From the IMG/VR virus record IMGVR_UViG_3300009093_000034, positions 62,001 through 126,000 of that record: a stretch of DNA of 64,000 nucleotides; one strand, written 5' to 3'. Under the pieces are notes generated by a model, which ran no database searches, was not told where the DNA came from, and saw only the letters and a list, made by a program, of their open reading frames with translations. Positions 27,383 to 63,227 of the stretch are shown here, piece by piece. A program made the position numbers and the translations under genes. Numbering within the stretch: the first letter of the stretch is position 1; the number at the start of each line of letters is the position of its first letter.

Positions 27383-27456
27383 AGCAAAGTAGTGTAACGG
27401 TTTCGCACGACCAGTGTCTACTGGTTAGTTCTAGGATCATCCCCTAGACTTTGCTA
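27383..27456 (+). tRNA. degenerate tRNA-like element (Asp-like GTC in a 6-nt loop, non-canonical T loop)
   Basis: Acceptor AGCAAAG/CTTTGCT, D arm TAGTGTAACGG..GCAC, stem ACCAG/CTGGT, T stem CTAGG/CCTAG. Confidence 0.5.
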
Positions 27457-47668: not shown

Positions 47669-48779
47669 ATGAAACACTTGTTTTGTAAGATCTTTCACAA
47701 GCCTACGTTTGTGAAACAGTGGGAGAGCGAAGGTAAAAAGCATTTAGATGCTTGGCCTTATAATCCTCTTGTTCTTCATCCAGATCTGAGTTACAACTTC
47801 CTTCATTTCATGTGTCCAAAGTGCAAGGAAGAATGGGACGAGTTCAAAGGCGATCCTTTCCCAAGGGTTCTTCGTCCGAGATATTATAGAAAAAGTGAGA
47901 CCGACACTACAGATACAATCTGGAGTTAAGTCTAAAACATGGTGGAGTTGCCAGAGAGGTTATTGGCCCTGACTGTGAATCAGGTGGTCGCGGGTTCGAG
48001 TCCCGTACTTCACCCTTTCTTAGGAGCATCAAATGCTGGTTAATCCGTTGATCTCTGTTCCGTGCAAACATTGCCAACAGACTACTACGATCAACGTCAA
48101 GTCTATCTCAAGTCTAAACACAGAGAATGAAAGACTCCAGCGAGAGTTAGATGAAGCCAACAAGAAGATCAAGTTGTTAGAACTTGCTGCTGGTTGGGGA
48201 AAGTCAGACTCAGGTGGCTTTGATGGTATGTTTGGAGATCTCTTCTCTACAAAGAAGAGAAACGAATATTGATGAAAGTAAAACTTCCATCTAGAGGACG
48301 AGGTCTCTTTAGAGAAGAGTACTATTCAATTTGCTCAGCTCACCAAGAGTTCAATCAAGAGTGTTCTACTTGCAAGATTGGTTCTTGGCATAATGTGTGG
48401 TTAGGTGTTGCTAATAGCGTTCTTTTCAAAGTTTGGCCAGCTCTTTGGATCTGGAATGCCAATCGTCCAAAGAACAAAACCAAGTGGCTCAAGTCCATCA
48501 ACGCTAAGAATAATTTCCCAAATCTAAGGTAAGAAAATGAAATTCTCAATTTTGGTCTTGTCATTCTGTCTTCTAACTGGTTGTAGCGCTGCTTACAATG
48601 GCGGAATGAACAACAGCTATTCTCCTTCCCTGTTTTCAATCCCAGAAGGATTGGAGTACGGAAAAGAAGTGGGAAAGAACTGGTTCGAAGGAACCTACAA
48701 AGGTGACAAGGTTTTGATCCATCAGACCGTTTCATACGGTGGATATTGGGAAGTTACCTTTATGTACGTGAAGAAGTAA
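47669..48779 (+). CDS. small hypothetical proteins (47669-47929, 48033-48272, 48269-48532, 48537-48779 lipoprotein)
   Basis: ORF track; the last has lipobox LLTGC. Confidence 0.55.
47941..48015 (+). tRNA. tRNA-His(GTG)
   Basis: CCTGA-CTGTGAA-TCAGG; C73. Confidence 0.88.
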
Positions 48780-48796
48780 GATCGTATATTAGATGA

Positions 48797-49408
48797 ATGC
48801 CTCAATTCACCGACGACCAAACCTTCTTACTGAAAAAGTCCTTTGAAAAGTTCTTGAAGAACTCAACTGGAAAGTTCGTTGTTTTTGACCTTGAGACAAA
48901 CGGTTTTCATGGTTCTAGTGTTCTTTCCATCTCAGCACAAAAGTGCCTCTTTGTAAGAGGAAAGAAAGTCTCTGTTCTTGGGGACTACAATCGTTTCTAC
49001 TTTCCTGTAGAGAAGTTCAATTGGCAGGCCATCAAGATCAACGGTCTTGGAAGAACTGCAGTGACAGCAAAAAGAGGTTCAGCTACTTACGCTCAGAACT
49101 TTATCGACGACATTACTGCCTTCAAACGATGGTGTGAAGGAATCGAACACTTTGTAGGTCACAACATCATCAAGTTCGATTGTGAGTTCTTTCCAAAGGA
49201 CTTCAAGTTCACACACGTGTTTGACACCATGTTAGAAACTGTGGAACTTTGTAAGATATTGAGAGATGACGGTAAGAACAAGTTCCCTAAGTTGAGGGAA
49301 GCCGCAGAGTTCTTTGAGATTGATATTTCTGAGGGAATTCTTCACACGTCTAGTTTTGACGTAGATGTGACCACTCAACTGTTTGAGAAATTGTACTCAC
49401 TAACTTAA
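48797..49408 (+). CDS. DEDDh 3'-5' exonuclease (DnaQ-like)
   Basis: VVFDLETNG...VGHNIIKFD...DTM...PKLREAAE...HTSSFDV. Confidence 0.9.
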   Translation: MPQFTDDQTFLLKKSFEKFLKNSTGKFVVFDLETNGFHGSSVLSISAQKCLFVRGKKVSVLGDYNRFYFPVEKFNWQAIKINGLGRTAVTAKRGSATYAQNFIDDITAFKRWCEGIEHFVGHNIIKFDCEFFPKDFKFTHVFDTMLETVELCKILRDDGKNKFPKLREAAEFFEIDISEGILHTSSFDVDVTTQLFEKLYSLT

Positions 49409-49973: not shown

Positions 49974-50060
49974 GGCTCGGTGGCAGAATAGTTATGCAGC
50001 GGTCTGCAAAACCGTATAGGTTTGAAAGAACCTAAGTGGGTGCAAGTCCCATCTGGGCCT
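49974..50060 (+). tRNA. tRNA-Cys(GCA) with a long variable arm
   Basis: GCGGT-CTGCAAA-ACCGT; extra hairpin TAGGTT-TGAAAG-AACCTA; U73. Confidence 0.8.
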
Positions 50061-50371
50061 CTAGGTTTGATAGAAGGGAAGCATAAGACTTCTGTATTGA
50101 GAACCTTACAAAGGAGAGTGGTGCGTATACGCGTATCGCTAATATCGTAGAGAAGGAAGTCCAATGTTTTGGTCAGCCTTCGACCTACATCACGGTCTTT
50201 GTAGATGAGAATGGTCAAGAGATTGAGCATATTGAGTCTAGAGAGATTGAAGAGTTTGAATACCGTCTTGAGGAGCAACTTTTGCTTCTTAGGATCACCC
50301 AGGAAGAACGCGAACGCCAGTTGATAAAGACTGAAGCGTTCTTCAAGGACCTTCAACAGGTCGGGTAATAG

Positions 50372-50445
50372 GCTGATGTGCATCGACTAGTAAAGTGGCC
50401 GCTCTCATAAGGCGGATTATGTGGGAGCGTTACCCACCATCAGCA
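50372..50445 (+). tRNA. tRNA-Met/Ile2(CAT), variant T loop
   Basis: GCTGATG/CATCAGC; CCGCT-CTCATAA-GGCGG; T loop AGCGTTA. Confidence 0.75.
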
Positions 50446-50534
50446 TCCCTAAAGAAAAGTCAACTGTCCCTGGCCGCGAGTTGTCGTGAGACTTCCGCAT
50501 GCCCACCATAGTTGACTTTTCTTTTTAGAAAGGA

Positions 50535-51141: not shown

Positions 51142-51441
51142 ATGAGTAAGTACTTAGTTCTTAAGGAACAACTAGAAACTATTGGGACAGGTGAGATGAC
51201 CTGTTTTGGAAATTCTATGACCCCAATTTTATCTAGTGGTTCCAGATTACTCTTTCAAAAATGTGATGACTACGAAGTTGGAGACATCGTCTTTTGTAAG
51301 ATCAAAGGACGATTCATAGATGCTCACTTGGTCACTAAGAAAGACAAAGGTTCTAAGAGATGGATGATCTCTAACAATCATGGCCATGAAAATGGTTGGA
51401 CTCATACGATCTATGGTAAGGTCGTGAAGGTGCTTAGTTAA
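51142..51441 (+). CDS. S24/S26 peptidase-like protein
   Basis: GNSMTPIL...EVGDIVFCK...AHLV. Confidence 0.7.
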   Translation: MSKYLVLKEQLETIGTGEMTCFGNSMTPILSSGSRLLFQKCDDYEVGDIVFCKIKGRFIDAHLVTKKDKGSKRWMISNNHGHENGWTHTIYGKVVKVLS

Positions 51442-52193: not shown

Positions 52194-52826
52194 ATGACAA
52201 GAGACAACGCTCGACACATGGTTTTGTCCATAGCAAATAGTATGGGGATAAAGCTCTCTTCTGAAGAGGAAGAGAAGCACATCAATGATGTCATAAAGAG
52301 CACAGATGAGTGGTTAGAGAATAATGGTCCAGATCTTCCAGAAGAGGAGATCTCAGACGAAGATGCTTTTCCCATCACTGATGTTTCTAGCGATGAGAGA
52401 AAGGTCTTGAACAGCTATAGAAACTATGGTTATGAGACTATCAATAAGTTCTTGAGGTTCGGAAACTCTGAGTCTTTGTCTCAACACAAAGACATGATTG
52501 AGTTTCGAATAGCTACGATCGATGACGTCATAGAAAGGAATCATTCCTTATCTGACGGAGTGGTCTATAGAATTGTTGAAGATGAAGGTTTTCTAAAAAG
52601 TTCGTTCACTGAACCAGCTTTTTTATCAACTTCATTTGATCACAGTTATATTGATTCACAGACGGAGAACTATGAGAACCCAGAGATTCTGGTGATTCAT
52701 GTTCCAAAAGGAACTCCGTACGCAAGAGTGGCAGAACATGCCATGGATGATTTTGAAGGTGAGGTTCTTCTTCCAAGAGGAGGAACCTTGACAAAGCAAG
52801 GAGATCATTGGAACTTTTCTTGCTAA
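52194..52826 (+). CDS. ADP-ribosyltransferase (Alt/VIP2-like, R-S-E clade)
   Basis: YRNYGYETINKFLR...VVYR...FLSTS...EGEVLLPRG. Confidence 0.9.
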   Translation: MTRDNARHMVLSIANSMGIKLSSEEEEKHINDVIKSTDEWLENNGPDLPEEEISDEDAFPITDVSSDERKVLNSYRNYGYETINKFLRFGNSESLSQHKDMIEFRIATIDDVIERNHSLSDGVVYRIVEDEGFLKSSFTEPAFLSTSFDHSYIDSQTENYENPEILVIHVPKGTPYARVAEHAMDDFEGEVLLPRGGTLTKQGDHWNFSC

Positions 52827-52869
52827 AAAGTTTTCAAAAGGATAAGATCGTGAGATATTATTCTTTACA

Positions 52870-53276: not shown

Positions 53277-53352
53277 GGAAAATTCGCCTAGCTGGTCAAG
53301 GCAAAATCATTTGAGATTTCTATCGCTGGTTCAACTCCAGCATTTTTCACCA
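53277..53352 (+). tRNA. degenerate tRNA-Gln-like (TTG in a 6-nt loop), encoded CCA
   Basis: GGAAAAT/ATTTTTC-A-CCA; AAATC-ATTTGA-GATTT. Confidence 0.55.
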
Positions 53353-53483
53353 CAAAACAGTTGTGGCAGAAGTTACCGAGTTACTTTGAATCAAACCAAC
53401 CAGTTCCCACGGTTAAGTAGTTGATTCCTGGAAACTTTTGAAAAAAAGTTTTCAAAAACCAAAAGCTTTGAGATATTAAATAA

Positions 53484-54050
53484 GCAAACTGACGCTGAGT
53501 CAGTTCTAAAGTTTAACTTAGTTGAGAGCAAAAACTAAGATGCGTGCTTAAAACCTTCTCCACGAAAGTGGATCCCCCCGGAAGCAGAGGCTGTTGTAGG
53601 TAACCTGAAGGCCTCCTCGATGCATCGCTCTCCCTGGAAGATCTTACGACGATCGTTGATCCTAGTAAGTTATTCTAGAACCAAGTTCGTTGAACTTGGG
53701 AGCCGGACAAGTTGGATAAGTAAACACCTAATGGTGACGCGAATCTGACTTCAGTGCACACTGAAAACCCTCCTTTGGAACCGAAACGTTCTGAAGATTC
53801 ACCCCAGGTGAGGCTGTTGTGGGTATCCTGAAGGCCTCCATCGTGCACGGTATGTCTTGGCCGCTTTTGGCGGCGCCTGAGACCTTTTAGACAGGACTCG
53901 GGGAGGTGAAAACCTGGCAGTTTATGTGAGTTCGCTATTTGCGTTGGCGCGCACCGGGAACAACCCTCGCCAAAGGGGATCTGAGTAGGAATCCAGTTAG
54001 GATCGAAAGGATAAACGTGGCTGCTTTCTCATTCCAACTCTTTGAGTTGG
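53484..54050 (+). ncRNA. candidate large ornate ncRNA (~570 nt)
   Basis: ORF-free, GC-elevated, own promoter, many hairpins, duplicated 30-nt module. Confidence 0.65.
53587..53839 (+). repeat. direct repeat GAGGCTGTTGT(A/G)GGTA(A/T)CCTGAAGGCCTCC at 53587-53616 and 53810-53839
   Basis: 28 of 30 positions identical by eye. Confidence 0.9.
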
Positions 54051-54052
54051 GG

Positions 54053-54147
54053 AACCATCTAGTGTAACGGTGGCACACCGCCTGACGATAGGTCGTAGAG
54101 ACTGACAATAAGGGGGCAGATTGAGGTTCAACTCCTCTCGATGGAAT
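54053..54147 (+). tRNA. tRNA-like element with an expanded anticodon arm
   Basis: D arm TAGTGTAACGGTGGCAC, T loop TTCAACT, CCATC/GATGG acceptor; ~20 extra nt in the anticodon region. Confidence 0.45.
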
Positions 54148-54242
54148 CAGTAGATTTTTGAGAATCAAGATCTTGCGGGGTTAAGAGGATCAACGAACTG
54201 ACGTATCATGAAATCTAGCCGCAAACGGAAAGTAGAGATGCG

Positions 54243-54315
54243 GTTCCCATCGTCTAGTCGGATAGGACACCGGCCGTGCAGGCCGGAAACACGGGTTCGA
54301 GCCCCGTTGGGGATA
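54243..54315 (+). tRNA. tRNA with Glu/Asp-like body and a TGC-centred loop (identity uncertain)
   Basis: CGTCTAGTCGGATAGGAC D arm; CCGGC-CGTGCAG-GCCGG; U3-G70. Confidence 0.6.
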
Positions 54316-54341: not shown

Positions 54342-54411
54342 TGCGAGTTGGTGTAATAGCAGCATCAAAGTCTCATAAGCTTTAGGTCCCGTGCAATTCG
54401 GTGGCTCGCGT
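54342..54411 (+). tRNA. tRNA(CAT), variant T arm
   Basis: AAAGT-CTCATAA-GCTTT; GCGAGT/GCTCGC. Confidence 0.6.
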
Positions 54412-54574
54412 CTAACCCACAGCGGTGGAATGTCTTACTTCGGTCTAGAAAAAACAGACAGTCCGATTATTCTTGGGTTTATTTTCATATCAGGCGTGCT
54501 TCACAACGTCTCAGAAGTCTATCGTAGTGGTAGAAAGAGTGATCGGAATTGTCGTGACCGTCCTATCGACCTAC

Positions 54575-54646
54575 GGGCTGATCGTATAACGGTTATTACA
54601 GTAGCTTTGCAAGCTTCGAATCAGGGTTCGATTCCCTGTTGGTCCA
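54575..54646 (+). tRNA. tRNA-Ala(TGC)
   Basis: G3-U70, A73; loop TTTGCAA. Confidence 0.85.
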
Positions 54647-54701
54647 GTGAAGATGTATAGAAACAGATTGGTAAGAATCCGTTCTCCATTCTGATAAAAA
54701 C

Positions 54702-55382: not shown

Positions 55383-55436
55383 TAATTTGTTTCTGTTTGG
55401 TGAATCTTTTGAGATATTTCTATTTCAGAGGTTAAT

Positions 55437-55757
55437 ATGATCACTAACACAGTTACAGTCAAGGCTAAGTACATGAATGTAACTTGTTACTTTCTAGTTA
55501 CTGGTCAAGACGCAGCTTCTATCATTAGATCAGAACTTTTAGGAAGAAATCATTATGATAGACATTCAAGATCTTGGATGGCTTATCGTCTTGAAGGATC
55601 TAAAAGAATTCACACTACTCTTGCAAGAAAAATTTGCATTGAAGGTTATGATCTAAAGATCGAAAATGACAAAGTTTTTAGAGGAAGAGATAATACTCCA
55701 ACTAAGGATTGTTATTTTGACTTTAGAAAGGACACCTTGGAAAAGGTGATCAAATGA
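55437..55757 (+). CDS. hypothetical protein
   Basis: RBS GAGG; TGAGATATT promoter upstream. Confidence 0.6.
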   Translation: MITNTVTVKAKYMNVTCYFLVTGQDAASIIRSELLGRNHYDRHSRSWMAYRLEGSKRIHTTLARKICIEGYDLKIENDKVFRGRDNTPTKDCYFDFRKDTLEKVIK

Positions 55758-60759: not shown

Positions 60760-62019
60760 ATGAGTCAGAACTTAGAAACATCAGAGACGTTTAAGAGTCT
60801 ACTGAAGAAACACCAGAACCAAGGTTTAGACAAAGCTAACTTCTGGAGGAACGGCCACTTAGGACCAATTCCTCCTGATGTCCATAACAGTCTATCTAAC
60901 CAGATCAAGGACCAAAGAGAGTTCTTTGATCTACCAAAACCAGACATGTACGTTTGGTTGGTCTTTGGTGGCTACGACGATCTAGATAGTTTTCTAGACT
61001 ACTATTCCAAAGTTCTTCCAGAGAAAACGTACTTAATCTTCCTCTTAGATAAAAACCCTCCTTTGTCTATCCCAGAGTTGAAGAGTCGACTCTCTCCTAT
61101 CTTCCAACAAATTCTATTTCTCAAAATTCCTGATACCAGCTTGCACAGCTACGTAAAGGTTCAACTCCATTATTTCAGTGCGATCTACGCTAGACTGGGA
61201 TCTAATGCGTGGAATCTATTCGTAGATCTAGATGAATTTCTTCCACTTCCAAAAGAGTATCCCACCTTTCAAACCTTCTGTTCTATGTTGGAAGAGAAGA
61301 AGATCCTTCAACTCACCACTCTTATGGTCGATGCGTGGGAACTACAGTCTCATGGTCAAACAGACTTTTACTTTGACTCTCTTGGTCCTGATAAGAGTAA
61401 ATTTTTAACTAAACATCTTAAGAACAACTACATGATGGATAACGTTCTCAAGGACGAGAGCTACTTCATCTCCCCTGAAGGCATTCGATGTATGTTGTTC
61501 AACTTCTCAAGGAATGAACTCCTTGGGATCTTCTCTACGAGAATGGAAGAGACCGGCCAGAAGGTTGTGTTGATTAAGCCAAAGAACATGTCTTATGCTT
61601 ATCCAGTTTCTAGCCATGAACCTCACTTCGTCTATAGCTCTGTGAAAGAAGCTCTGGTGAAGTATCCGTTGATCCACAAGAAGTTTGTCAAGAAGTTCTA
61701 CACCAATGCCTTGGCCTCTGTTTATTCCAAAGAGAAACAGATCAAGGACGCAGGAAAAACCTCGTTTGGTTGGCCTGTAGAGATGAACTGGGTAGAGGAG
61801 ACTGAGAAGCTCTACTCCTCTTTGGATGGTTATGGACCCTACAAACTTCTAGGAGACCACGATGATGATCACTTCTTGGATCTCTTCAAAGATAGGTTCT
61901 TGAAGTTGTCAGAACTCGTAGACGATAAACTTCAACTTTCCTTATCAGATAACCAGTTCGGTTTGAAGTCAGGAGACAAGACCATGTATCCATTTCTACA
62001 CTTGGACCCTCTACTATGA
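60760..62019 (+). CDS. GT-A (family-2-like) glycosyltransferase paralogue 1
   Basis: WNLFVDLDEFL DxD motif. Confidence 0.6.
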   Translation: MSQNLETSETFKSLLKKHQNQGLDKANFWRNGHLGPIPPDVHNSLSNQIKDQREFFDLPKPDMYVWLVFGGYDDLDSFLDYYSKVLPEKTYLIFLLDKNPPLSIPELKSRLSPIFQQILFLKIPDTSLHSYVKVQLHYFSAIYARLGSNAWNLFVDLDEFLPLPKEYPTFQTFCSMLEEKKILQLTTLMVDAWELQSHGQTDFYFDSLGPDKSKFLTKHLKNNYMMDNVLKDESYFISPEGIRCMLFNFSRNELLGIFSTRMEETGQKVVLIKPKNMSYAYPVSSHEPHFVYSSVKEALVKYPLIHKKFVKKFYTNALASVYSKEKQIKDAGKTSFGWPVEMNWVEETEKLYSSLDGYGPYKLLGDHDDDHFLDLFKDRFLKLSELVDDKLQLSLSDNQFGLKSGDKTMYPFLHLDPLL

Positions 62020-63227
62020 ATCTAAAAGATTACTTGATCAAGAACCAAGAGTTGGGTCTTCCTTACGCCAACTACTACAGAAAAGACTTTGATGAGGTTC
62101 CTCTTCCAGAGGATATCAAACTTCAGATGGACTCCCAACTAAGAGACCAAAAACATATCATGAACCTTCTAGCTCCCGAGGCTTTCATCTGGATTGTCTA
62201 CTCAGGAGTTGAGGACATCACTGAGTTCTTATCTTACTATTCTAGAGTTCTCCCAAAGAACACTCGAGCCATTGTTCTGTTGGATCGATTGTCTCCTAAG
62301 CCAGCTAAAGAAGTCAAAGATCTTTTTGAAGCTGTTTGGACCACTTTATTTCTTGAGATCCCTGAGAACTGTACTTACAGTTTTGTCAGGGTCCAACTCT
62401 ATTACTTCTCCTATCTCTTCAACAGGCTAGGAAAGTGGACTTGGAACTTGTTCGTGGACGTGGATGAGTTTCTACCTTTACCTAAAGAACATCCAACTTT
62501 CTCTAGTTTGTTTCAACTACTGGACTCTAAGAACATCACTCAGCTTTGTACCACCCTGTTGGATACTTGGGAGCTTAGAAAAAATGGGATCTCAGATATG
62601 TACTTTGATTCCATGGAGGAAGAGGAGTTACAGAACAACTTAGACCTTCATCTCTCAAAGGGATGGTGGCTAACAGATAACCAAGATCTTCCTTTCTTAG
62701 AAACTGATGGAAAGAGACGTGTGTTTTACAACTTCTTCAGAAACAAGGTTCTTGGGATCACTAGTTACGATGACATCCTTCAGAAGACTGTCTTGGTCAA
62801 AAGAACAGACAACAACTACTTGTACTCATTGAGCAACCATGAACCTTTCTCTTTCTATCGTTCTGAGAATGAGTTTCTTGTTCGATATCCTTTGATCCAC
62901 AAGAAGTTCTTGAGAGACATTTATCCAAAAGCTCTTGCTTCTGTCTTCAAGAAAGAAAAACAGATCAAAGAACTTGGAAGAAACACCAACGCCTGGGCCG
63001 ATCACTTTTACTGGGTGGATGCTCTTGAAGAGCTCAATAAACAAGTAGGTGAAGGTTTCGGACCTTACAAGGTGTTAGGAGATCACGATGACGACTCTCT
63101 TTTTAGAGCTCATGGCTTTCACTTGTCCAAGTTGAGTGAACTAGTAGACAACGATCTTACGTTCTCTCTTAAAGATTTTCCTTACCAATCAATGTATCCG
63201 TTTCTCAATGTGGATCCTCTACTATGA
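62016..63227 (+). CDS. GT-A (family-2-like) glycosyltransferase paralogue 2
   Basis: WNLFVDVDEFL; colinear with paralogue 1, both ending YPFLxxDPLL. Confidence 0.6.
   Translation: MNLKDYLIKNQELGLPYANYYRKDFDEVPLPEDIKLQMDSQLRDQKHIMNLLAPEAFIWIVYSGVEDITEFLSYYSRVLPKNTRAIVLLDRLSPKPAKEVKDLFEAVWTTLFLEIPENCTYSFVRVQLYYFSYLFNRLGKWTWNLFVDVDEFLPLPKEHPTFSSLFQLLDSKNITQLCTTLLDTWELRKNGISDMYFDSMEEEELQNNLDLHLSKGWWLTDNQDLPFLETDGKRRVFYNFFRNKVLGITSYDDILQKTVLVKRTDNNYLYSLSNHEPFSFYRSENEFLVRYPLIHKKFLRDIYPKALASVFKKEKQIKELGRNTNAWADHFYWVDALEELNKQVGEGFGPYKVLGDHDDDSLFRAHGFHLSKLSELVDNDLTFSLKDFPYQSMYPFLNVDPLL

What the first reader, a model, noticed from the sequence alone, without database searches (positions are those of the whole stretch)
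53484..54050. Candidate large ornate ncRNA with a duplicated module and self-complementary loops
Seen: ~570 ORF-free nt start just after a strong promoter (TTTTCA-17 nt-GATATT with TG) and end at a tRNA-like element. They contain a 5' three-way junction (TAAGCA/TGCTTA closing AACTGAC/GTCAGTT and CTTAGTT/AACTAAG), GAAA tetraloop hairpins (TCCAC-GAAA-GTGGA), CCAAGTTC/GAACTTGG, a long-range GATCCCC/GGGGATC pairing, and two near-identical 30-nt modules GAGGC-TGTTGT-RGG-TAW-CCT-GAAG-GCCTC. Each module is followed by a small hairpin with a palindromic TGCA loop (CGA-TGCA-TCG; TCG-TGCA-CGG). Established: GOLLD and ROOL are large ornate RNAs found in phage tRNA clusters and have been reported to form multimers. 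Inference: a member of one of these classes or a new one, with repeated modules as multimerisation or protein-binding sites.
Basis: partly seen in the sequence, partly recalled or inferred. Interest (0 to 1): 0.8.

Follow-up and report, generated by a model that had tools for sequence, protein, structure and literature searches.

The report
Orphan two-domain RNA beside phage tRNAs
A 570-760-nt non-coding stretch inside the tRNA island of an uncultured 306-kb soil phage looks like a real, undescribed structured RNA built from two duplicated units of about 160 nt, but it matches no known RNA family and has almost no relatives, so its function is still a hypothesis.

Summary
The stretch is closed in all six frames under any stop reassignment. 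It lies on the tRNA strand of a 30+-tRNA island in an uncultured 306-kb phage. It is preceded by a strand-specific motif (GAGATATT, 8 on +, 0 on -) that marks likely phage promoters. No Rfam family matches even at E<=10, including GOLLD, ROOL, OLE, tmRNA, RNase P, introns and riboswitches. The closing helix of each junction uses the 'TGCA' hexamers, so the palindromic 'loops' need not be kissing loops. One metagenomic relative keeps unit B: 87 nt identical, then two compensatory pairs in one hairpin, while a candidate small ORF is frameshifted. Searches of IMG/VR, JGI metagenomes, GTDB genomes, GenBank phages and 5.8 billion protein clusters found no other relative. Best reading: a new, orphan structured ncRNA co-transcribed with tRNAs, most likely a two-site binding platform. 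A multimeric cage, a cis-acting leader and non-functional spacer all remain open. Interest is moderate, because covariation and expression evidence are thin.

The parts
53449..53477 (+). Promoter-like site: TTTTCA, 17 nt, TG-n-GATATT. The -10-like part belongs to the recurrent motif GAGATATT.
   Evidence: Same arrangement at 52831-52859; 0.04 expected. GAGATATT occurs 8 times on +, 0 on -, against about 1 expected per strand. Seven of the eight sites lie in gaps between predicted ORFs or tRNA genes; the one at 47878 lies inside the 3' end of ORF 47669-47929. All lie ahead of + strand genes or tRNA groups (positions checked).
53481..53551 (+). 5' three-way junction: UAAGCA/UGCUUA closing AACUGAC/GUCAGUU and CUUAGUU/AACUAAG. 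Its 3' strand overlaps the start of unit A, so the two folds compete.
   Evidence: MFE equals centroid, z -2.57, 2/200 shuffles.
53538..53707 (+). Unit A. A three-way junction (closing helix 53539-45/53620-26, GAAA-tetraloop hairpin 53559-72, module 1 at 53587-53616), followed by hairpins 53634-78 and 53681-99, closed by GCUC/GAGC.
   Evidence: Unconstrained MFE of the isolated unit. Paralogous to unit B, 64 identical of 108 aligned columns.
53587..53616 (+). Module 1: GAGGCU/GGCCUC stem, asymmetric internal loop (GUUG / AA), UAGG/CCUG stem, UAA triloop.
   Evidence: pair probability 0.97-0.99.
53709..53751 (+). Inter-unit hairpin (AGUUGGAU/AUCUGACU with inner CACC-UAAU-GGUG).
   Evidence: Pair probability 0.95-1.00 in all folds.
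53752..53910 (+). Unit B. A three-way junction (closing helix GUGCAC 53754-59 / GUGCAC 53843-48, hairpin 53773-96 with CGAAAC loop, module 2 at 53810-39), then hairpins 53860-74 and 53876-53902 and a G-rich closing strand. This is the part conserved in the metagenomic relative.
   Evidence: A 1,891-nt contig in run X3 matches 53753-53910 only. 53753-53839 is identical. Hairpin 53860-65/53869-74 is kept through C62U:G72A and G63U:C71A plus U65C. Fold.
53810..53839 (+). Module 2, 28/30 identical to module 1. The A-to-G difference turns an A-U pair into G-U; the other difference is in the triloop.
53911..54053 (+). 3' region with several hairpins (for example UCCAACUC-UUU-GAGUUGGG at 54033-51). 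No comparative evidence.
54054..54146 (+). Degenerate type II tRNA-Ser(CGA)-like element. Good T arm and D arm; two acceptor-stem mismatches, one anticodon-stem mismatch, no U33, and a 27-nt variable region without a stem.
   Evidence: ARAGORN at relaxed threshold only. Not found. z +0.63.
54147..54212 (+). Tail carrying the 3' strand (54168-87) of a possible long-range closing helix with 53628-44. If that helix is real, the RNA encloses the tRNA-like element and ends about 30-40 nt before tRNA-Ala (54243).
   Evidence: Cofold gain -20.0 against -10.0 +/- 3.4 in shuffles, 4/400. It competes with local hairpin 53634-78 at a cost of only 4.2 kcal/mol.

Best explanation
The stretch encodes a previously undescribed structured non-coding RNA of the phage.

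Build (shown): two tandem paralogous units of about 160-170 nt, 53538-53707 and 53752-53910. Each is a three-way junction: a closing helix, a GAAA-type hairpin, and a hairpin with a nearly invariant asymmetric internal loop (the 'module'). Two further hairpins follow each junction. A 5' three-way junction, a 3' region, and possibly an enclosed degenerate tRNA-Ser-like element flank the two units.

Biogenesis (inferred):
- Transcription starts near 53484 from a phage promoter.
- The transcript runs on into the downstream tRNA genes.
- RNase P cutting at the 5' end of the first downstream tRNA frees the RNA.

Mechanism (inferred, weakest step): it acts in trans as a platform with two equivalent binding sites. 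These are the two modules, whose sequence, and not only their pairing, is conserved. They would hold two copies of a protein or RNA partner during infection.

It is not a member of GOLLD, ROOL or any other Rfam family.
For: Non-coding:
- All frames are closed under any stop reassignment.
- No gene was called there in the assemblies whose gene lists cover the stretch.
- No spurious-ORF relatives.

Context:
- Same strand as 30 tRNAs.
- Largest gap of the cluster, 701 nt.
- The strand-specific motif GAGATATT (8:0) sits directly upstream; the next copy is at 55411.
- No terminator-like site lies between it and the tRNAs.

Structure:
- The module duplication is beyond chance.
- The duplication extends to about 90-160 nt.
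- Both units fold on their own into the same three-way junction.
- 32/32 cells pair in register, against 31-47% when partners are slid. Both double-sided changes fall in the closing helix.

Comparative:
- The X3 relative keeps unit B from exactly the first base of its closing helix.
- It has 87 identical nt and then two double compensatory changes plus one wobble-to-Watson-Crick change in hairpin 53860-74.
- A 4-nt deletion frameshifts the only candidate small ORF.

Module: it is invariant in X3 and 28/30 between paralogues, while neighbouring stems change. That argues for sequence-specific recognition.
Against: - Only one relative, seen only as a difference table. Its flanks are not detectably homologous (15-16% of random segments score as well).
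- The 87 identical nt could reflect recent recombination rather than selection.
- With two sequences the shuffle control cannot be significant (121/500).
- The folding z-score (-2.9) is not strand-specific (-2.6 antisense) and not exceptional within the cluster.
- No RNA run was listed as holding it, so transcription is not shown.
- No partner is known.
- The local and long-range folds differ by about 4 kcal/mol, so the boundaries are uncertain.
Confidence: 0.45

Rival explanations
1. A self-assembling large RNA in the manner of GOLLD or ROOL. The transcript (53484 to about 54207) forms homo-oligomers through its self-complementary hexamers (AUGCAU at 53620, GUGCAC at 53754 and 53843). It may hold the enclosed tRNA-Ser-like element or other tRNAs inside.
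For: - Same genomic niche and size range as GOLLD/ROOL, which form cages using palindromic kissing loops and sometimes carry embedded tRNAs (papers read).
- Three palindromic hexamers are present.
- A long-range helix that would enclose the tRNA-like element exceeds chance, 4/400.
Against: - No Rfam match.
- TGCA is not enriched: 3 seen, about 3 expected by my own estimate from length.
- In unit A the upstream partner is AUGCGU, which is not palindromic. That fits an intramolecular closing helix better than symmetric kissing.
- The small hairpin stem is weakened in X3.
- Pairing with the tRNA-like element itself is not beyond chance, 71/400.
Confidence: 0.1
2. Non-functional spacer: decayed tRNA genes and a local duplication in a fast-evolving tRNA island, with hairpins that arise by chance.
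For: - A degenerate tRNA-like element is present.
- No relatives in any collection.
- The z-score is similar on both strands and in another gap.
- The identical 87 nt in X3 could be a recombination tract.
Against: - Compensatory double changes in hairpin 53860-74.
- Covarying closing helix between paralogues, with the X3 match starting exactly at the helix.
- Its own promoter-like motif.
- No tRNA-model similarity anywhere in 53484-54050 at E<=10.
- The module is kept at 28/30 while its surroundings diverged to about 60% identity.
Confidence: 0.2
3. A cis-acting leader of the tRNA operon. The structured 5' part controls transcription read-through, processing or stability of the roughly eight downstream tRNAs. 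One possible route is alternative pairing that masks or exposes the tRNA-Ser-like element and the first tRNA.
For: - Position between the promoter-like motif and the tRNA genes, with no further motif until 55411.
- Near-isoenergetic alternative folds, local against long-range.
- Long-range helix to the tail just upstream of tRNA-Ala.
- An 'inhibited storage' role has been proposed for tRNAs embedded in GOLLD.
Against: - No terminator-like hairpin with a U-run in the leader.
- Complementarity to the tRNA-like element is at chance level.
- In X3 unit B sits in a different sequence context, which suggests an autonomous unit.
- I know of no precedent for tandem-aptamer control of tRNA operons.
Confidence: 0.15
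4. Small-protein genes. Each module is a ribosome-binding-site hairpin (GAAGG, 7 nt, then ATG at 53620 or GTG at 53843) ahead of a short ORF of 42 aa or 15 aa.
For: Shine-Dalgarno-like GAAGG at the right spacing before both start codons.
Against: - In X3 a 4-nt deletion shifts the frame after codon 2 of the second ORF, while the overlapping hairpin is kept by compensatory changes.
- The two peptides are unrelated beyond what the DNA duplication gives.
- No gene caller called either.
Confidence: 0.03
5. A DNA-level element, such as a replication origin, packaging site or protein-binding iterons, rather than an RNA.
For: Two direct 30-bp repeats 223 bp apart and several palindromes in a non-coding stretch. 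Similar folding scores on both strands.
Against: - Only two repeats.
- No inflection of cumulative GC skew at this place.
- G-U pairs in the conserved helices (for example two in 53773-81/53788-96, and U-G in both modules) would be A-C mismatches on the other strand.
- A GAAA tetraloop and a promoter-like motif both lie on the + strand.
Confidence: 0.04
6. A phage tmRNA (53838-54145) that uses the T arm of the tRNA-like element.
For: ARAGORN proposes it at an 80% threshold, with tag VAAFSFQLFELGNHLV.
Against: - Not found at default or 95% threshold.
- No G3:U70 pair in the acceptor stem, and an atypical tag end.
- No Rfam tmRNA model matches at E<=10.
Confidence: 0.01

Closest known systems
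[quoted passage not shown]
   Same: - A large non-coding RNA encoded in phages and prophages next to tRNA islands.
- A many-hairpin ('ornate') layout.
- tRNAs can be embedded inside the RNA.
- Function unknown.
   Different: - No similarity to the Rfam model, even locally at E<=10.
- Here the core is an internal tandem duplication of a unit of about 160 nt, not a conserved 3' domain with a variable 5' domain.
- Multimerisation is untested.
- The embedded element is a degenerate tRNA.
ROOL RNA (rumen-originating, ornate, large)
   Same: Size (550-600 nt), phage or prophage origin, proximity to tRNA arrays, no associated protein gene.
   Different: - No match to the Rfam model.
- No evidence for the pseudoknotted multi-junction ROOL architecture.
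- Essentially a single lineage rather than a widespread family.
Stable RNAs of the phage T4 tRNA gene cluster (species 1 and 2; recalled from my own knowledge, not checked here)
   Same: Non-tRNA stable RNAs encoded among phage tRNA genes, co-transcribed with them and released by tRNA-processing enzymes. Function unknown.
   Different: Those are about 120-140 nt single-domain RNAs. This is 4-6 times longer and internally duplicated.
Tandem-aptamer riboswitches such as the glycine riboswitch (own knowledge)
   Same: Two paralogous three-way-junction domains in tandem in a 5' leader. Conserved junction or internal-loop nucleotides with covarying stems.
   Different: - No Rfam riboswitch match.
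- No expression platform.
- What lies downstream is tRNA genes, not an mRNA.

Membership tests
GOLLD | Match to the family covariance model (conserved 3' domain) | tested here: not met
   No hit at gathering score on the window. No hit at E<=10 with permissive filters on 53300-54300 or on each unit. The paper read confirms the family is in Rfam.
GOLLD | Encoded in a phage or prophage near a tRNA island | tested here: met
   Uncultured 305.8-kb phage contig. 30 tRNAs on the same strand around it.
GOLLD | Homo-oligomeric cage assembly | not testable with these tools
   Needs SEC-MALS or cryo-EM of the transcript.
ROOL | Match to the family covariance model | tested here: not met
   no hit at E<=10.
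ROOL | About 550-600 nt, phage or prophage, near tRNA arrays, no partner protein gene | tested here: met
   570-720 nt. Context as above. Nearest genes are an ADP-ribosyltransferase 650 nt upstream and a 106-aa ORF 1.2 kb downstream.
tmRNA | tRNA-Ala-like acceptor with G3:U70, tag reading frame, detection by ARAGORN and Rfam | tested here: not met
   Proposed only at the 80% ARAGORN threshold. No G3:U70, atypical tag. No Rfam hit.
tRNA (element 54054-54146) | Cloverleaf that passes tRNA detectors; U33; intact stems | tested here: inconclusive
   Called tRNA-Ser(CGA) only at relaxed threshold, with 3 stem mismatches, no U33 and no variable-arm stem. Missed. z +0.63.
Group I / group II introns, RNase P RNA, OLE, raiA, riboswitch classes | Match to the Rfam models | tested here: not met
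   Only noise-level hits to unrelated eukaryotic families, far below gathering scores.
New structured-RNA family (claim made here) | Statistically supported covariation across independent homologues | tested here: inconclusive
   Two double compensatory pairs in one hairpin in the single relative, and two between the paralogues. This is too few sequences for a significance test (121/500 shuffles).
New structured-RNA family (claim made here) | Expressed as a stable RNA | tested here: inconclusive
   No RNA run was listed as holding the stretch; the tool states that this is not proof of absence.

The most novel reading that the evidence does not exclude
The element is the founding member of a third class of large phage tRNA-island RNAs, unrelated in sequence to GOLLD and ROOL. 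It has a two-fold internally duplicated core that gives it built-in pseudo-symmetry. It encloses a tRNA-derived domain within a long-range helix. It either self-assembles through its self-complementary hexamers or clamps two copies of a partner (for example tRNAs or a tRNA-targeting host nuclease) during infection.
Probability: 0.1. Interest if true: 0.85.

Novelty: new variant of a known kind. Interest (0 to 1): 0.5.

Why it matters
Large structured RNAs of unknown function in phage tRNA islands (GOLLD, ROOL) were recently shown to form RNA-only cages, and what they do is an open question. An independent, unrelated RNA in the same niche would show that the niche itself selects for large structured RNAs, not one lineage. 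Its simple architecture, two copies of a 160-nt unit carrying an invariant internal loop, would give a tractable handle on the partner through pull-down with a 30-nt hairpin.

It also shows that jumbo-phage tRNA islands hold unannotated RNA genes. In this window these include at least one uncalled tRNA and a second, even more strongly folded gap.

The practical value is limited for now. The phage is uncultured, its host is unknown, and the lineage is almost alone in public data.

Tried and rejected
Homologue hunting, all negative except the same phage:
- blastn against GenBank phages.
- Four module or core patterns and one neighbouring-tRNA pattern in IMG/VR.
- Module pattern in JGI metagenomes: 96 loci, all chance coding hits apart from two copies of the same phage.
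- Module pattern in GTDB genomes: 60 loci, all chance.
- L048 looked promising because it lies in a tRNA array. It is a different structure, in which the motif is one strand of a 16-bp stem.

Spurious-ORF searches to catch gene calls laid over homologous RNAs: none.

Synteny through neighbouring proteins:
- ADP-ribosyltransferase: one 99% relative.
- 244-aa protein: none.
- RNase T-like and 419-aa proteins: self only.
- GroEL: 43% at best.
- Exact-protein look-up: five assemblies of the identical phage.

Ideas dropped:
- The loose ends of the X3 contig seemed to show a hairpin swap. Their similarity to the window's flanks is at chance level, so I withdrew it.
- tmRNA.
- Small ORFs behind RBS-like modules.
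- Hidden coding through stop reassignment.
- A third domain copy, searched with a covariance model of the domain: none in the window.
- Pairing of the upstream segment with the tRNA-like element: at chance, 71/400.

Full report
**Context**
- The window is part of IMGVR_UViG_3300009093_000034, a 305,833-bp uncultured phage contig from a rhizosphere metagenome.
- It encodes a family A DNA polymerase, GroEL, a tail-collar protein and an ADP-ribosyltransferase.
- From about 46.1 to 59.5 kb it carries a + strand island of 30 or more tRNA genes interspersed with small ORFs.
- The finding lies in the largest non-coding gap of that island: 701 nt between tRNA 53277-53352 and the tRNA-like element at 54054.
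- The same phage, identical over this region, turns up in five assemblies. In the assemblies whose gene lists cover the stretch, no gene caller placed a gene between the ADP-ribosyltransferase gene and the 106-aa ORF at 55437.

**Check of the observation**
All the literal features exist at the stated places.
- The two 30-nt modules (53587-53616, 53810-53839) are 28/30 identical. Nothing like them is expected by chance or found elsewhere in the window.
- The 5' three-way junction folds exactly as drawn and beats shuffles, z -2.57, 2/200.
- The GAAA hairpin and the CCAAGUUC/GAACUUGG hairpin have pair probabilities of 0.99.

Several claims need trimming.
- The promoter is only an 8/12 match to sigma-70 consensus and was not reported by the consensus scan.
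- The GATCCCC/GGGGATC pairing costs about 19 kcal/mol when enforced and crosses the other predicted long-range helices.
- TGCA occurs three times in about 740 nt. By my own estimate from length, about three are expected.
- The 'tRNA-like element' is recognised only at relaxed ARAGORN threshold, as a degenerate tRNA-Ser(CGA). On its own it folds no better than shuffles.

**Coding potential**
- Each + frame has 11-20 stops of all three kinds, and no single reassignment opens a frame.
- Each module ends in GAAGG followed 7 nt later by ATG or GTG, so I considered small ORFs behind RBS hairpins.
- In the one relative available, a 4-nt deletion shifts the second ORF's frame after two codons, while the hairpin overlapping it is preserved by compensatory changes. 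This points to an RNA rather than a peptide.

**Known families**
- Rfam 15 (4227 models) gives only tRNAs at gathering scores.
- At E<=10 with permissive filters there is nothing for GOLLD, ROOL, OLE, tmRNA, RNase P, introns or riboswitches. This holds for the 1-kb region and for each unit scanned alone.
- A tmRNA proposal by ARAGORN at an 80% threshold lacks G3:U70 and has an atypical tag. I rejected it.

**Anatomy**
- The duplication is much larger than 30 nt. Both copies read: hexamer, AAAACC-YUC, GAAA-type hairpin, CCCC linker, module, complementary hexamer.
- Each isolated domain (53538-53628 and 53752-53851) folds as its unconstrained MFE into the same three-way junction. The closing helix is GAUGCGU/AUGCAUC in A and GUGCAC/GUGCAC in B.
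- On the paralogue alignment all 32 cells of the closing helix and module pair, against 31-47% when partners are slid. Both double-sided changes (A-U to G-C, U-A to C-G) and a G-U to A-U change lie in the closing helix. With two sequences the shuffle control cannot be significant (121/500).
In unit A the partner, AUGCGU, is not palindromic, which fits intramolecular pairing.
- Each junction is followed by two more hairpins and a G-rich strand. This gives two tandem units: 53538-53707 and 53752-53910.
- A covariance model of the domain finds no third copy in the window.

**Boundaries**
- The free MFE contains a nest of long-range helices joining 53617-79 to 54058-54196.
- Tested against shuffles, the part that pairs with the tRNA-like element is at chance (71/400). 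The helix between 53612-46 and the tail 54147-54212 is not (4/400).
- That helix competes with a local hairpin (53634-78) at a cost of only 4.2 kcal/mol.
- The RNA may therefore end near 53910, near 54050 or near 54207. In the last case it encloses the tRNA-like element, as some GOLLD RNAs enclose tRNAs.

**Comparative evidence**
- Of four other metagenome runs holding parts of the region, three show the same phage.
- Run X3 (mine metagenome) also has a 1,891-nt contig, at higher depth, that matches only 53753-53910.
- The match begins at the first base of unit B's closing helix. It is identical up to 53839, through module 2.
- It then carries C62U with G72A and G63U with C71A, which are two double compensatory changes, plus U65C (wobble to Watson-Crick) in hairpin 53860-65/53869-74. 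The loop changes freely.
- The next hairpin (53876-53902) is invariant.
- The 30-nt loose ends on both sides are not detectably similar to the window's flanks. Only unit B is shown to be conserved, and the 87 identical nt could be a recombination tract.
- A second X3 contig of the same depth matches an uncalled tRNA-Met gene at 54342-54412 with one difference. The relative is thus a related phage whose spacers have diverged.

**Search for more relatives**
Every route was exhausted: GenBank phages, IMG/VR patterns, JGI metagenomes, GTDB genomes, spurious-ORF searches, neighbouring proteins and exact-protein look-up. Only the same phage was found. The lineage is nearly alone in public data; GroEL is at most 43% identical to any GenBank phage.

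**Thermodynamic controls**
- The candidate's z-score is -2.9 on + and -2.6 on -.
- Other gaps of the island give -1.0 to -2.7, and one (50062-50534) gives -6.1.
- Folding energy alone therefore does not single out this region or its strand.
- Strand is indicated instead by G-U pairs in conserved helices, by the GAAA tetraloop, and by the promoter motif.

**Transcription unit (inferred)**
- GAGATATT occurs 8 times on + and never on -, against about 1 expected per strand. Seven sites lie in gaps between predicted ORFs or tRNA genes; the eighth, at 47878, lies inside the 3' end of ORF 47669-47929. All are ahead of + strand genes or tRNA groups.
- Two copies share the fuller TTTTCAAAA-N-TGAGATATT form: 52831-59 ahead of tRNA-Gly and 53449-77 ahead of the candidate.
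- The next copy is at 55411, and no terminator-like site intervenes.
- The candidate would therefore be the 5' part of a transcript that also carries about eight tRNAs. RNase P cleavage at the first tRNA would free it (established tRNA biology; not tested here).
- No RNA run was listed as holding the stretch.

**Mechanism**
- Shown: a non-coding stretch with two paralogous three-way-junction units, and structure-preserving change in one relative and between the paralogues.
- Inferred: transcription from 53484 and release by tRNA processing.
- Most speculative: function. The module is conserved in sequence (30/30 in X3, 28/30 between paralogues) while neighbouring stems change. I take the two modules to be two equivalent recognition sites, and the RNA to be a two-site platform for a protein or RNA partner.
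- I put about 0.7 on 'functional structured RNA' overall: 0.45 on this reading, 0.10 on a GOLLD/ROOL-like self-assembling RNA and 0.15 on a cis-acting tRNA-operon leader.
- Non-functional spacer gets 0.2. The small-ORF, DNA-element and tmRNA readings together get under 0.1.

**Comparison and novelty**
- It works, as far as context goes, like GOLLD and ROOL: large, many-hairpinned, phage-encoded, in a tRNA island, with no partner gene.
- It fails their defining model test, so it is not a member of either.
- It would be a new family of a known kind.
- The evidence falls short of what the field requires for a new class, namely covariation across many homologues and expression.

Noticed in passing
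window 50062-50534 (+): The gap right after the odd 88-nt tRNA-Cys folds far better than shuffles and in a strand-specific way: z -6.1 on +, -2.4 on -, and -6.6 with 100 shuffles. It forms a chain of long near-perfect hairpins, including a 15-17-bp stem followed by a U-run. No Rfam hit at E<=10 and no phage blastn hit. It also holds a 93-codon stop-free frame (50087-50365) with a protein-like, Glu-rich translation but no ATG/GTG/TTG before 50282 and no Pfam or PHROG match. It may be a second structured RNA, a pseudogene, or both.
   Followed up: partly
window 12737, 24889, 33187, 45909, 47878, 52852, 53470, 55411 (+): GAGATATT occurs 8 times on the + strand and 0 on the - strand, against about 1 expected per strand. 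Seven sites lie in gaps between predicted ORFs or tRNA genes; the site at 47878 lies inside the 3' end of ORF 47669-47929. It is often preceded by TTTT or TG, and two copies share TTTTCAAAA upstream. It is probably the -10-like element of a phage promoter class.
   Followed up: partly
window 54342-54412 (+): A probable tRNA-Met(CAT) gene with a weak T arm. It is missed by default ARAGORN and Rfam and called at the relaxed ARAGORN threshold. The overlapping stretch 54338-54400 matches a contig of the X3 relative with 1 difference. The 89-aa ORF 54391-54660 that overlaps it is probably spurious.
   Followed up: partly
window 49974-50061 (+): tRNA-Cys(GCA) of 88 nt with a 17-nt insertion in the variable region, forming its own hairpin (Rfam alignment). 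This is unusual for a class I tRNA.
   Followed up: no
window 52194-52826, 48797-49408, 51142-51441 (+): Protein genes embedded in the tRNA island: an intact ADP-ribosyltransferase (PF03496), an RNase T-like exonuclease and a short S24 peptidase-like protein. This looks like a possible host-takeover or counter-defence neighbourhood.
   Followed up: no
window 60760-62019 and 62016-63227 (+): Tandem paralogous genes (419 and 403 aa, 43% identical), with a third of 416 aa just beyond the window. They have no relative outside this phage among 5.8 billion protein clusters.
   Followed up: no
L048 1-230 (- strand), contig Ga0265797_10034273: In a tRNA array (Arg/Glu/Asp repeats; bacterial-looking, origin not checked), a non-tRNA insert of about 150 nt is closed by a perfect 16-bp stem (CCUGUUGUGGGCAACC / GGUUGCCCACAACAGG) and contains T-arm-like sequences. 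It is unrelated to the finding.
   Followed up: no
window 27383-27456 and 53277-53352 (+): ARAGORN calls two tRNAs with undetermined identity and two-base 'anticodons'. The second also scores 45 bits with the Rfam tRNA model.
   Followed up: no
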